A stretch of DNA of 64,000 nucleotides from Bispira polyomma. Lineage: Eukaryota. Below the pieces are notes generated by a model. That model saw only the letters and a list, made by a program, of their open reading frames with translations, was not told the DNA's origin and did no database searches. Below are positions 12,181 to 15,120 of this stretch, in pieces. The stretch is taken from positions 13,020,001-13,084,000 of the forward strand of contig OZ287759.1 in NCBI GenBank assembly GCA_965649765.1, written 5' to 3'. Each line of letters opens with the position of its first letter. Positions within the stretch are counted from its first letter, which is position 1. Both the position numbers and the translations under genes were made by a program.

Positions 12181-15120
12181 CTAAGGTGGAAAAGCCTGTT
12201 CAAAAAGATAGGCCTTTAGCTTACTCCTGAAAGAGGAAAAAGTTTGAGCCAGGCGAACATGATCAGGTAGGCTGTTCCAAATGAGGGGGCCATCATGAGC
12301 TAGGCAGTGATTGAACTGAACTTTGGATTTGTGGATGCGATGGTCGAAAGTGAGAATGTTAAGGTATAATTTATTAGGGTTACTGAGCCTTGTCCTGACT
12401 GAGCATGTATATTTGGATAGATGGGGGCTAAAATAAGTGGGTAATCCAGAATTTAGAAATTTATATATTATTGTTGCTGTTTTGAAAGCAACACAATATT
12501 TTATTGGGAGCCAGTGCAGTGACTTGAGTACAGGAGTAATGTGGGAAAATTTAGAAGTTTTGGTCACAATATGTGCCAATGAGTGTTGGATATTCTGAAG
12601 GTGTCTGAGATCACTACGAGATAAGGAACGGAACAGAGAGTTGCAGTAATCAAGCCTGCTGCTGACCAAAGCATTGGCAACAGTGATTGCAGTGGATTTT
12701 GAAAGATAGCGTCGAATCTGCCTGAAATCATGGAGGCCAACAAAACATGATCTACACACCGATGCGACATGGTTAGAGAAGGAGAATTCAGAGTCGAACA
12801 CCACACCCAGGTTTTGTACTTTGTCAACTGGAAAAAACCTGCTGCCAAGAATGTCAAGTGGAAAACAGCTGGACAATTTTTCCCATTGCGATTTGTAGCC
12901 AAACAAAATAAACTCAGTCTTCTCAGGGTTCAGCTTGAGTTTATTTGCTGCCATCCAGTGTTGTACATCAACAAGGCAGTTCTGTAAGGAAGTGAAAGCT
13001 GCCTGGGCAGAGTCAGGTGTAAGGTGGATGTACAGTTGGGTATCATCAGCATAGAAGTGAAAGTTTATGTTTTTGTATGCAGCAATAATCTTGCTGAGTG
13101 GAGTGGTGTACATGGAAAACAAAATGGGACCCAGGACGGAACCTTGGGGAACACCAAATTTTAACCATGTTGGGTCGGATAAGATATTGCCAATTTTCAC
13201 TGATTGGAATCTATCAGACAAATATGCCGTGAACCACTTAAGCGCCATACCGCTGATATTGAACCAAGACGATAGGCACTCAAGAAGAACTTTGTGATCA
13301 ATAGTATCAAAGGCTGCTGACAGATCCAGCAGTACTAAGGCAGTAGGCATACCTTTGGATAAAGATGTATGAACATCATTTTTGATGCAGAGAAGTGCAG
13401 TCTCAGCAGAATGACCACTTTTGTACGCTGACTGATACTTATTGGACAGATTGCTGACGTCAACATGTTGTTTGATCTGTAAGGCAACCGCGCGTTCTAC
13501 CAACTTAGAGATATAGCAAAGGCCTGAGACAGGTCAGCCTTTGGAAGAGAAGGTTTTTTTATTAAAGGAGTGACAATGGCCTTTTTAAAATCATCTGGAA
13601 AGACGCCATTTACCAACGAGAGGTTGATAAGTTTTGTGATTAAGGGCAATAAAATGTCAATACATTCCTTAACAAGGAATGTGGGCCACGGATCTAACAA
13701 GCAAGATTTTACGGGTGATGCCAGTATAATTTTCCTGACTTCATCAACAGTTACTGTGGAGAAACAGTTGAAGATGGTTGGTGGAGCTGTTGGTAAAGGG
13801 GCTTTTGCGGCGGCTAATGTAAAACCGTCACGGATTCTGGTAATTTTATCAGTGAAAAAAGTACTAAAATGTTTGCCAGTGATTTACTATTGCAATTTTC
13901 GGGTAGTATAGTCTGTTTTTTACAATGGAGGGTGCTATTTAGTTTTTGTCAAAGTTTCTTCAGGTCACCCTCGCTTTGTGATATCATGTTGGCATAGTAG
14001 ACACATTTTAAGTCATTTATAGTGTTGTTGCACCGGGTGATCCATTGGCGTAGTCTAGATCTATTTGTAGTAGTTTTGTTTCGGTGCCATGTTCGTTCGG
14101 CTTGTCTGCGCAGCATCTTCATTTCACGATAATTACTGGTGATCCACTCAGGTGCCGCCTTCTTCAATGTCTTTACATGGCGCATGGCGTTCTATAAGAG
14201 ACTGCAGGTCAGCGCAGTACTGTGTGTATAGGTCAGTGGCATTATCAGCAGGAGACTTGACGAAGGCCGTATCTGCCAAGTCTCGTCTAAGGTCAGACAT
14301 ATTGATTTTTTGAAATTGCCGAAAAGTGATTTGTGTGACATCAAAAGATGGTGGGGAGGGAGCATCAATTTCACAGGATATTGAAAAATGATCACTGATA
14401 CAACCAATGTTTTTTTTTGTTTCTGATACCATTGAAATCAGTCAGAGTTAGCAAGCAGTCTAGTGTATGCCCAAAAGACATGAATTCTTTGAAAAATGTA
14501 GTGAGATTTGAGCCAGGAGGCCGATAAACTGTTGTAAAATTTAAACAGTGGTTTTTCCAGTGAGCAGAGACAAGGATGAGTTCGAAAGATGTAAAACTTG
14601 GTGTAGCAACTAATCGACATTCATAGTTTTTGTTAATAAAAAATCCCACCCCACCACCCTGTTTACCTACACGAGGGGTATGGAATAGTTGAAAGTCAGC
14701 TGGGGTAAGTTCAGAGAGGAATGATGGAGTATCAGAACTCCTAATGTGTGTTTCTGTGATGCCGAAAATATCTATGGAGGATGAGTCGATCAAATCAGCT
14801 ATGACAGGGCCTTTATTCCGCAATGAGCGGGCATATCCAACTCCGAACTGGATTGGGCCAGGGTTGCTAGTGATATTACCTGCCAGTAGGATTGTAATAA
14901 GTTTGAATGAACTAGCCTTTTGTGGGTAATTGATTGGGCAAAATTTAGACCGGGAGTAACTGTGTGTATGAAGAGATCAGAAATGTGGGACTGGATGGCA
15001 GGACAAATTGTTTTCTTCCAGGTGGTATTGCATTGCCAATGAATTAGACAGTGTGGAGTTGTTGCGGTAGTAAAACAGAGGGAGGGACAGGTACATGACG
15101 GCCGCCCTAATGACAAACAT
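12181..15120 (-). pseudogene. LINE ORF2 (leader, 2A-like motif, APE, RT) broken by frameshifts, stops and an internal APE deletion
   Basis: ORF pieces 14392-14823, 14148-14432, 13949-14185, 13497-13700 and 12181-13503 are collinear parts of one APE-RT polyprotein; the frame extends upstream to an ATG at 15120 with one TGA at 14977-14979. Confidence 0.85.

What the first reader, a model, noticed from the sequence alone, without database searches (positions are those of the whole stretch)
14854..15120. L2 LINE with no visible ORF1: an 88-codon hydrophobic leader and 2A-like 'NPG/P' motif fused in frame to the endonuclease
Seen: on the minus strand an ATG at 15120 opens MFVIRAAVMYLSLPLFYYRNN...HF*SLHTHSYSRSKFCPINYPQKASSFKLITILLAGNITSNPG/PIQFGVGYARSLRNK. 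It is in the same frame as the APE domain and is interrupted only by one TGA (14977-14979), plausibly CGA decay. No RRM/PHD-type ORF1 is visible between this ATG and the apparent 5' end. Known: picornavirus-type 2A ribosome-skipping peptides (D[V/I]ExNPG/P, often preceded by LLxxG) occur just upstream of APE domains in some animal non-LTR retrotransposons. Inference: this family may use a single polyprotein in which a short, signal-peptide-like leader is released from APE-RT by a non-canonical 2A (NITSNPGP). That would be a tunable recoding switch or a small secreted/membrane TE peptide replacing ORF1.
Basis: partly seen in the sequence, partly recalled or inferred. Interest (0 to 1): 0.75.

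Follow-up and report, generated by a model that had tools for sequence, protein, structure and literature searches.

The report
Dead LINE copy with 2A-like leader
This is a broken copy of a young, very abundant jumping gene with no ORF1, whose single protein starts with a short greasy segment and a variant "ribosome-skipping" 2A motif just before the endonuclease; the 2A part has been known in such elements since 2013.

Summary
On the minus strand, ATG 15120 opens 88 codons that end in NPG|P (14854-14865), in frame with the endonuclease and broken only by TGA 14977-14979.

The window copy is a decayed member of a young family (40 scored copies 97-98% identical). In 29 of 29 other copies the TGA is TGG (Trp), not CGA. 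The motif reads DIASNPGP in 25 of 29, so NITSNPGP is damage private to this copy.

Copies start at one shared 5' end, 379-689 nt before the ATG. That stretch holds a head and 83-bp monomers but no ORF1.

Against a sister family, the 18-codon 2A-like block has 0 amino-acid and 4 synonymous differences. Leader codons 1-71 give dN/dS 0.35 and the endonuclease 0.07. Relatives at 30-50% identity keep L..LL.GD[IV]..NPGP.

Single-ORF LINEs with an N-terminal 2A-like peptide, including Glu-to-Ala variants of very low activity, were published in 2013 (PMC3708506).

The possibly new part is a hydrophobic, signal-peptide-like N-terminus 56-83 residues upstream of the motif, which recurs in relatives. Its function is untested.

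This scan already noted the same architecture on other DNA of this genome (s1-579540, s1-691728).

The parts
12038..15790 (-). Whole element copy (3753 bp): a dead member of a young single-ORF APE-RT LINE family
   Evidence: BLAST of the window against 20 other 7-kb copies gives shared homology from about 15790 to 12038. End probes give length 3753, with unrelated flanks and no target-site duplication.
15525..15790 (-). 5' head of the untranslated region, starting T/GGACT; carries one conserved upstream ATG at 15655-15653
   Evidence: The head aligns at 92-97% in most full-length copies. An ATG at head position ~135 is present in 15 of 15 copies with a complete head, in varying frame relative to the main ATG (my reading of the rows).
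15145..15524 (-). Tandem ~83-bp monomers of the 5' UTR, variable in number among copies
   Evidence: TRF reports 15145-15321, period 83, 2.1 copies, 94% matches. Older diverged units lie upstream. UTR lengths of 379-689 nt among copies fall in steps.
14854..15120 (-). Leader: 88 codons plus P89, from the ATG to NPG|P
   Evidence: ATG is present in 29 of 29 other copies and the frame is open in 28 of 29. dN/dS is 0.35 for codons 1-71 against the sister family.
15061..15117 (-). Hydrophobic N-terminal segment (codons 2-20), signal-peptide-like
   Evidence: Best 11-residue Kyte-Doolittle mean is 2.33 in frame against 0.92 and 0.89 in the other two frames. T makes up 55% of codon position 2. AlphaFold predicts a helix over residues 2-31, with pLDDT about 74 for the first 20.
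14977..14979 (-). Premature TGA (codon 48), private to this copy
   Evidence: 29 of 29 other copies read Trp (TGG) here.
14854..14907 (-). 2A-like block, codons 72-89. The family reads FKLITILLAGDIASNPG|P; the window copy reads ...AGNITSNPG|P
   Evidence: There are 0 of 18 amino-acid differences and 4 synonymous differences against the sister family. L78, D82, N86, G88 and P89 are invariant in 17 aligned relatives.
14150..14853 (-). APE endonuclease region, broken by frame changes and a deletion of about 145-150 bp at 14472/14473
   Evidence: Other copies carry about 144-152 extra bases between window 14473 and 14472. ORF pieces lie in different frames. Pfam Exo_endo_phos matches a sister copy.
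12181..13503 (-). Longest open piece: reverse transcriptase and C-terminal region, ending at the ORF's stop
   Evidence: 440-aa ORF. Pfam RVT_1 matches at E 1.2e-28.
12038..12180 (-). 3' UTR ending in the pentamer repeat (TAGAT)2TA at 12049-12038
   Evidence: Other copies end in 1-4 further GATTA/TAGAT units.

Best explanation
The window holds a dead copy of a young, high-copy, single-ORF APE-RT LINE of the CR1/L2 group; the exact clade was not tested. The copy has a premature TGA, several frame breaks and a ~150-bp deletion in the endonuclease. The family's unit is: a 5' head, a variable number of 83-bp monomers, one ORF of roughly 1030 codons, and a short 3' UTR ending in TAGAT repeats. There is no ORF1. 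The ORF opens with an 88-residue leader in three parts: a hydrophobic helix (residues ~2-20), a fast-evolving disordered linker (~21-70), and a 2A-like peptide FKLITILLAGDIASNPG|P whose last Pro sits one residue before the first strand of the endonuclease. The most likely mechanism is inferred, not shown. The 2A-like nascent peptide would act inside the ribosome at the Gly88/Pro89 codons. It would either skip that peptide bond in a fraction of rounds (StopGo), releasing the leader and starting APE-RT at Pro89, or lower the yield of downstream protein, or both. This would set how much free APE-RT is made, the control that ORF1 gives in two-ORF LINEs, as proposed in PMC3708506 and PMC3894237. 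Because position 14 of the core is Ala rather than Glu, separation is probably partial or weak. The window copy itself (Asn at p12, Thr at p14, stop at codon 48) is non-functional.
For: Shown here: (1) The family state comes from 29 other copies: TGG at the stop site in 29 of 29, DIASNPGP in 25 of 29, ATG in 29 of 29. (2) The 5' end is shared and flanks are unrelated in the 13 copies where both end probes hit, and the UTR is 379-689 nt with no ORF1. (3) The 5' UTR is ATG-poor: 41 found against 121 expected in 19 copies. For the 15 copies with a complete head, my sum of the rows gives 22 against about 91. No upstream in-frame ATG occurs in 20 of 20 copies. (4) Selection against a sister family of 8 copies: the 2A-like codons 72-89 show 0 of 18 amino-acid and 4 synonymous differences. 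Leader codons 1-71 show 23 of 71 amino-acid differences and dN/dS 0.35 (binomial P about 0.005-0.012). APE codons 90-218 give dN/dS 0.07. (5) 17 aligned sequences (one copy of this family plus 16 homologues) with 31% mean column identity keep L78, D82, N86, G88 and P89 invariant. 49 of 113 homologues carry NPGP near the N-terminus, 44 of those 49 with Asp at p12. (6) The pattern occurs at 3021 genomic sites against 2 in the control. (7) AlphaFold places the APE fold from residue 90, with the leader outside it. From papers: 2A-like peptides sit 40-80 residues from the N-terminus of ORF2 in Rex1/L2/Crack/CR1/Ingi LINEs that mostly lack ORF1 (PMC3708506 Results). D12 and N16 contact 28S rRNA, and D12A and N16A abolish StopGo (PMC12846837 passages).
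Against: Position 14 is Ala. Natural Glu-to-Ala variants (Crack-17_BF, CR1-4_NV) showed very low or no separation in reticulocyte lysate (PMC3708506). In a mutational scan of two viral 2As, no p14 substitution except His reached 0.6 activity (preprint 10.64898/2026.09.24.754024 passages). Conservation shows constraint, not which activity is constrained. No RNA run was found, so neither expression nor the transcript's 5' end is shown. One conserved upstream ATG in the head means the main ATG is not the first AUG. None of 20 sampled copies is open through the whole ORF; the first stop falls after 148-471 codons.
Confidence: 0.6

Rival explanations
1. The motif is a fossil 2A. It was once active with Glu at p14, now no longer acts on the ribosome, and is kept only as an N-terminal extension or linker of the endonuclease.
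For: Ala, Ser, Thr, Asn or Gln replace Glu in most relatives: the p14 tally among 49 homologues is S 20, A 10, E 10, K 4, N 2, T 1, Q 1, H 1. Only 3 of the first 100 genomic sites listed have Glu (my count). Such variants were inactive or nearly so in PMC3708506.
Against: A functionless relic should not show 0 of 18 amino-acid changes beside 4 synonymous ones while the adjoining 71 codons changed at 23 positions. Nor should it keep D12, N16, G18 and P19 invariant at 31% mean identity. AlphaFold puts the block outside the APE fold, with pLDDT below 50 at residues 81-86.
Confidence: 0.15
2. The 2A-like block mainly lowers protein output (stalling or abortive translation) rather than separating two products. 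This would make it a translational brake on APE-RT.
For: A 2026 preprint (PMC13405545, passages) reports that 59% of the tested ORF2p-associated 2A-like peptides fell in a 'reduced abundance' class, linked to upstream leucines. This block is Leu/Ile-rich (ILLAG).
Against: This peptide has not been tested. This reading and StopGo are not exclusive, and I fold it into the best explanation as one of two outcomes.
Confidence: 0.3
3. The leader is not translated. The real start is a downstream Met, and the 88 codons are 5' UTR that happens to be open.
For: Copies are only about 2.6% from the family majority, so openness within the family alone proves little. One upstream ATG exists in the head.
Against: dN/dS is 0.35 and 0 against a sister family with dS of about 0.35-0.5. 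Homologous predicted proteins of other genomes start 71-130 residues before NPGP. Hydrophobicity is frame-specific. The UTR is ATG-poor.
Confidence: 0.05

Closest known systems
[quoted passage not shown] 2013, PMC3708506; Luke et al. 2013, PMC3894237)
   Same: The position is the same: 40-80 residues from the N-terminus there, 88 here. The motif lies directly before the APE domain, as in L1Tc, Ingi, CR1-17_BF and STR-194_SP. The element has a single ORF and no ORF1. The proposed role is the same: down-regulating or separating ORF2p.
   Different: The hosts differ from the species they list; the host here is not named. Those two papers never mention a hydrophobic or signal-like N-terminus (word searches). 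Whether this family is already in their supplementary alignments could not be checked, because supplements are closed.
Glu-less natural variants: Crack-17_BF (E to A), CR1-4_NV (E to A), Crack-3_NVe and L2A-1_NVe (E to S)
   Same: The core has the same form, GD[IV](A/S)xNPGP. The paper says every 2A-like sequence of the Crack clade departs from Glu at this site.
   Different: Those were judged very weakly active or inactive and possibly decayed. Here the Glu-less block is shown to be under strong purifying selection between two families and across relatives.
Sea-urchin NLR '2A-like signal sequences' (Roulston et al. 2016, PMC4981915)
   Same: An N-terminal targeting signal combined with StopGo gives two fates from one ORF: a signal-bearing fusion or a cytosolic downstream protein.
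   Different: There a single 26-residue peptide is both signal and 2A. Here the hydrophobic segment and the 2A-like block are separate and lie 56-83 residues apart, and the cargo is a LINE APE-RT.
[quoted passage not shown]
   Same: The core keeps LAGD-[VI]-x-S-NPGP with a Leu-rich upstream stretch. D12 and N16, which contact rRNA (PMC12846837), are present in the family.
   Different: p14 is Ala in the family and Thr in the window copy. p12 is Asn in the window copy.
'Reduction-class' eukaryotic 2A-like peptides (preprint PMC13405545)
   Same: These are retrotransposon ORF2p N-terminal 2A-like peptides with upstream leucines and non-canonical cores.
   Different: This peptide was not among anything I could see tested.

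Membership tests
Class A 2A/StopGo peptide | C-terminal N-P-G-P | tested here: met
   NPGP is present in the window copy and in 27 of 29 other copies; 1 reads NPCP and 1 NPGQ.
Class A 2A/StopGo peptide | Asp (or Gly) at p12 and Val/Ile at p13 | tested here: met
   The family reads D-I in 29 of 29 other copies. The window copy has Asn at p12, a private change.
Class A 2A/StopGo peptide | Glu at p14 | tested here: not met
   Ala in 27 of 29 and Thr in 2 of 29 other copies; Thr in the window copy.
Class A 2A/StopGo peptide | Hydrophobic, Leu-rich context just upstream | tested here: met
   KLITILLAG precedes the core. AlphaFold predicts a helix at residues 71-79. L76 is nearly invariant and L78 invariant in relatives.
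Class A 2A/StopGo peptide | Measured skipping of the Gly-Pro bond | not testable with these tools
   This needs a reporter translation assay.
Single-ORF APE-type LINE with N-terminal 2A-like sequence (Odon 2013) | APE and RT domains in one ORF, with the 2A-like sequence upstream of APE near the N-terminus | tested here: met
   Pfam Exo_endo_phos and RVT_1 match. NPG|P lies at residues 86-89 and APE starts at 90.
Single-ORF APE-type LINE with N-terminal 2A-like sequence (Odon 2013) | No ORF1 in full-length units | tested here: met
   The 5' end is shared and flanks are unrelated in the 13 copies where both end probes hit. The UTR is 379-689 nt and holds only one short upstream ORF.
   No named reference LINE sequences were available, and the named protein hits carry uninformative names. 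The pentamer-repeat 3' tail fits the CR1/L2 group only from my recollection.
Sec-type signal peptide or signal anchor | N-terminal hydrophobic core of about 8-15 residues after a short, positively charged start | tested here: inconclusive
   Arg5 is followed by AAVMYLSLLLFYY. The best 11-residue KD mean is 2.33 and is frame-specific. That value lies below the 2.5 cut that 14 of 24 relatives pass.
Sec-type signal peptide or signal anchor | Prediction by a trained method, and translocation or cleavage in microsomes | not testable with these tools
   No SignalP-type tool was available. N-glycosylation sequons are not enriched: 18 in 1243 residues against 124 in 10032, P 0.28.

The most novel reading that the evidence does not exclude
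The hydrophobic N-terminus is a working SRP signal or anchor, and its spacing to the 2A-like block is functional. That spacing is 56-83 residues in 15 of 16 relatives with a strong N-terminal hydrophobic segment, long enough for the segment to have left the exit tunnel when the ribosome reaches Gly-Pro. On this reading the leader docks the translating LINE RNA on the ER or nuclear envelope. The Glu-less 2A-like block then decides, round by round, whether APE-RT is released into the cytosol or stays fused to the signal and is lost to the secretory path. Membrane docking plus partial StopGo would thus stand in for ORF1, and the architecture is shared by many LINE families (about 3000 sites in this genome alone).
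Probability: 0.2. Interest if true: 0.8.

Novelty: new variant of a known kind. Interest (0 to 1): 0.45.

Why it matters
How single-ORF LINEs manage without ORF1 is an open question. The published answer (2013) is that an N-terminal 2A sets ORF2p output. That answer was weakened because many natural motifs lack the key Glu and looked inactive.

Here a Glu-less block is shown to be strictly conserved between two families and across distant relatives. It is also the dominant form in a genome with about 3000 such sites. Either these variants work in their own context, or the motif has another ribosome-level role.

The recurrent signal-like N-terminus at a regular distance gives a concrete, testable link between LINE translation and membrane targeting. 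For biotechnology, natural Ala, Ser and Gln p14 variants could serve as graded StopGo elements.

Tried and rejected
1. CGA decay for the TGA is rejected: 29 of 29 other copies read TGG.

2. DIESNPGP or NITSNPGP as the family motif is rejected: 25 of 29 copies read DIASNPGP.

3. A longer ORF starting further upstream is rejected. The window's frame is open back to 15816, but 20 of 20 other copies have no in-frame upstream ATG. Monomer number, in units of 83 bp, shifts the frame between copies.

4. Hydrophobicity as a mere by-product of T-rich DNA is rejected for this family. It is frame-specific: 2.33 against 0.92 and 0.89. It is weaker in the sister family: 1.87 against 1.27 and 1.74.

5. Enrichment of N-glycosylation sequons after the hydrophobic segment, as a sign of lumenal exposure, was not found. 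There were 18 in 1243 residues against 124 in 10032, P 0.28; only 2.25% of shuffles reached the observed count.

6. No target-site duplications were found. The longest shared word between the two flanks was 2-7 nt in 13 copies.

7. RNA evidence is lacking. The run search gave 3 runs of one study, none on record as RNA and all kept as contigs. Contigs cannot show expression or transcript ends.

8. Clade assignment (L2, Crack or CR1) was not possible: no named references were available and supplements of PMC3708506 are closed.

9. A note search by place near the finding returned nothing.

10. Searches of print for a signal-like LINE leader found no statement of it. PMC3708506 has 0 occurrences of signal, hydrophobic, transmembrane, secret or endoplasmic. 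PMC3894237 has 0 of hydrophobic or signal sequence. PMC13405545 has 0 of signal peptide (count column) and 0 of secret, endoplasmic or leader. Library searches gave no paper joining the two ideas for LINEs. This covers only the held library.
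Full report
WHAT IS IN THE WINDOW

On the minus strand an ATG at 15120-15118 opens a frame that reads through 88 codons to N86-P87-G88-P89 (14865-14854). It then runs straight into IQFGVGYARSLRNKGP... and the endonuclease. 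The only interruption is TGA at 14979-14977 (codon 48).

Pfam finds Exo_endo_phos at residues 107-295 of the same ORF in a sister copy. It finds RVT_1 (E 1.2e-28) in the window's 440-codon ORF at 12181-13503.

THE ELEMENT AND ITS FAMILY

A 501-base query around the leader gave 1606 first-look candidates in the window's own 1.035-Gb assembly. Forty were scored, all 97-98% identical over the full query.

Twenty copies were fetched with 7 kb each. They share homology with the window from about 15790 to 12038. End probes hit both ends in 13 copies, the window included. In these the unit starts with T/GGACT next to unrelated DNA and ends in a variable number of GATTA/TAGAT pentamers. Length is 3288-3942 bp, 3753 in the window. 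The two flanks share no word longer than 2-7 nt, so no target-site duplication is seen.

Between the 5' end and the ATG lie a 266-bp head (15790-15525) and tandem ~83-bp monomers. TRF reports 15145-15321, 2.1 copies at 94% matches, with older units upstream. Monomer number differs among copies, giving 5' UTRs of 379-689 nt. That space holds no ORF1.

The window copy is dead. Besides the TGA, it lacks about 145-150 bp of the endonuclease at 14472/14473 that other copies have, and its coding pieces lie in several frames. None of the 20 other sampled copies is open throughout either; the first stop comes after 148-471 codons.

FAMILY STATE OF THE LEADER

In 29 other copies:
- The ATG is present in 29 of 29.
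- Codon 48 is TGG (Trp) in 29 of 29, so the stop did not arise from CGA.
- The leader is open in 28 of 29.
- The core reads DIASNPGP in 25, DITSNPGP in 2, DIASNPCP in 1 and DIASNPGQ in 1.

The window's Asn at p12 is private to it. Thr at p14 is shared only with the two DITSNPGP copies.

IS THE ATG THE START?

No in-frame ATG lies upstream in 20 of 20 copies. The UTR is ATG-poor, with 41 found against 121 expected from shuffles in 19 copies. For the 15 copies with a complete head, my sum of the rows gives 22 against about 91.

One ATG at head position ~135 (window 15655-15653) is present in all 15 of those copies. Its frame relative to the main ATG varies, so it is a separate short upstream ORF. 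It has a pyrimidine at -3, whereas the main ATG has A at -3.

SELECTION

The degenerate pattern for G-D-[IV]-x-x-N-P-G-P hits 3021 places in the genome against 2 for the reversed control. By my count of the first 100 places listed, 23 belong to this family. Another 17 belong to a sister family that encodes the same nine residues with other synonymous codons. Only 3 have Glu at p14.

I fetched eight sister copies. I then compared the two groups by the majority letter of each column over the first 660 bases of the ORF. Twenty-seven of the 29 family copies were used; L023 and L025 dropped out because their motif no longer fits the pattern. Results:

| Region | Amino-acid differences | dN/dS |
|---|---|---|
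| Leader codons 1-71 | 23 of 71 | 0.35 |
| 2A-like block, codons 72-89 | 0 of 18 (4 synonymous differences) | 0 |
| Endonuclease codons 90-218 | 6 of 129 | 0.07 |

- For codons 1-71, dS is 0.49 and dN is 0.17. The excess of synonymous changes has a binomial P of 0.005-0.012.
- So the leader is translated and constrained, but loosely, while the 2A-like block is as constrained as the enzyme.
- Caveats: Nei-Gojobori counts ignore transition bias, and the sister group is small and older (majority support 0.89).

RELATIVES ELSEWHERE

A search with the longest open N-terminal piece (471 residues) found 113 proteins at E up to 1e-5 among 6246 candidates. The best were 39-52% identical and unnamed. 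Named hits (sea urchins, a feather star, fishes, corals) were at or below about 32%.

I aligned one copy of this family with 16 of the 113 hits, chosen because they cover the N-terminus, giving 17 sequences. Mean column identity is 31%. L78, D82, N86, G88 and P89 are invariant, and L76, G81 and P87 nearly so.

NPGP lies in the first 400 residues of 49 of the 113. Asp is at p12 in 44 of those 49. At p14 the tally is S 20, A 10, E 10, K 4, N 2, T 1, Q 1, H 1.

Single copies of eight other families of this genome show the same plan, where they are not too decayed. Leaders run 86-90 residues and end in GDVSINPGP, GDIQVNPGP or GDVELNPGP, followed by the endonuclease or, in one case, by a Cys/His-rich stretch.

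THE HYDROPHOBIC N-TERMINUS

AlphaFold, run on the 17-sequence alignment, gave a mean pLDDT of 75.7. It predicts:
- a helix over residues 2-31, with pLDDT about 74 for the first 20;
- pLDDT below 50 for residues 22-70;
- a short helix at 71-79;
- the endonuclease fold from strand 90-96 onward, at pLDDT 85-92.

In the family, the first 20 codons carry T at 55% of second positions, against 30% and 20% at first and third positions. The best 11-residue Kyte-Doolittle mean is 2.33 in frame, against 0.92 and 0.89 in the other frames.

Among the homologues, 38 start with Met and have NPGP at residue 56 or later, and these collapse to 24 non-redundant leaders. Of these, 14 of 24 have an 11-residue window at or above 2.5 within the first 35 residues. 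Only 0.3% of 1850 equal windows from the rest of the same proteins reach that value. Among Met-starting homologues without NPGP, 5 of 62 do.

In the 16 of 25 leaders with a strong N-terminal segment, the distance from its end to the Gly of NPG is 56-83 residues in 15, and 123 in one.

Evidence against a signal-peptide reading:
- The family's own value (2.33) is under the 2.5 cut.
- The sister family's frame contrast is weak: 1.87 against 1.27 and 1.74.
- Sequons are not enriched.
- No trained signal-peptide predictor was available.
- Predicted protein starts in other genomes are unverified.

WHAT IS KNOWN

Odon et al. 2013 (PMC3708506). I read the abstract, all of the Results and the first part of the Discussion.
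- It reports 2A-like sequences 40-80 residues from the N-terminus of ORF2 in Rex1, L2, L2A, Crack, CR1 and Ingi LINEs of frog, amphioxus, molluscs, sea urchin and sea anemone.
- Most of these elements lack ORF1, and some carry the motif directly before APE.
- It reports frequent loss of Glu at p14. E-to-A and E-to-H variants showed very low activity, E-to-S variants none, and every 2A-like sequence of the Crack clade departs from Glu at this site.

Other papers:
- Luke et al. 2013 (PMC3894237; abstract and passages) argue that the 2A replaces ORF1-type down-regulation of ORF2.
- Li et al. 2026 (PMC12846837; passages) show that D12, E14 and N16 contact 28S rRNA. They also show that rare natural core variants are active in their own context.
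- A 2026 preprint (10.64898/2026.09.24.754024; passages) finds no tolerated p14 substitution except His in two viral 2As.
- Another preprint (PMC13405545; passages) places 59% of tested ORF2p 2A-like peptides in a 'reduced abundance' class.
- Roulston et al. 2016 (PMC4981915; passages) describe sea-urchin NLR N-terminal peptides that are both signal sequence and 2A.
- de Felipe et al. 2010 (PMC2978324; abstract) show that translocation of the upstream protein can inhibit the 2A reaction.

None of the LINE papers I could search mentions a hydrophobic or signal-like N-terminus.

READING

The finding is a decayed copy of a family that belongs to a published kind.

It gives direct evidence that a Glu-less 2A-like block is under strong purifying selection. 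It shows that the Glu-less form dominates this genome. And it finds a recurrent hydrophobic N-terminus at a regular distance upstream, which I could not find described.

Whether the block skips, brakes or does both, and whether the N-terminus targets membranes, remain inferences. The same architecture was already noted by this scan on other DNA of this genome (s1-579540, s1-691728). Those notes are not independent support.

Noticed in passing
window 15145-15524 (minus strand); loci L031-L050: The 5' UTR holds tandem ~83-bp monomers whose number varies among copies, giving UTRs of 379-689 nt. This recalls the promoter monomers of mouse L1 (a recollection, not tested).
   Followed up: partly
window 15655-15653 (minus strand): One upstream ATG in the head is present in all 15 copies with a complete head. 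It opens a short upstream ORF (about 59 codons in the window) whose frame relative to the main ATG varies. It has a weak -3 context, against A at -3 for the main ATG.
   Followed up: partly
whole genome G000: The assembly has 3021 sites encoding G-D-[IV]-x-x-N-P-G-P against 2 in the reversed control. They come from at least ten codon-distinct families. Only 3 of the first 100 listed have Glu at p14.
   Followed up: partly
L065 (G000:C1:20862280-20863030): In another family, a canonical GDVELNPG|P is followed not by the endonuclease but by a Cys/His-rich stretch (C..C, C..C, H..C spacing). [quoted passage not shown]
   Followed up: no
proteins P0063, P0064, P0068, P0078: Some homologues without any NPGP also start with a strongly hydrophobic, signal-like N-terminus. 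One of them is a named fish protein. The hydrophobic start may therefore be older or more widespread than the 2A-like block.
   Followed up: no
L033 and L034: Two of the fetched loci carry a second partial 3' copy of the same family next to the full one. It is inverted in L033 and in tandem in L034.
   Followed up: no
window 10014-10092: A 16-bp tandem repeat (4.9 copies, 85% matches) lies about 2 kb beyond the element's 3' end.
   Followed up: no
window 58001-60000 and 40001-42000: These are the strongest GC-skew excursions outside the element, -0.34 and +0.19 in 2-kb bins.
   Followed up: no
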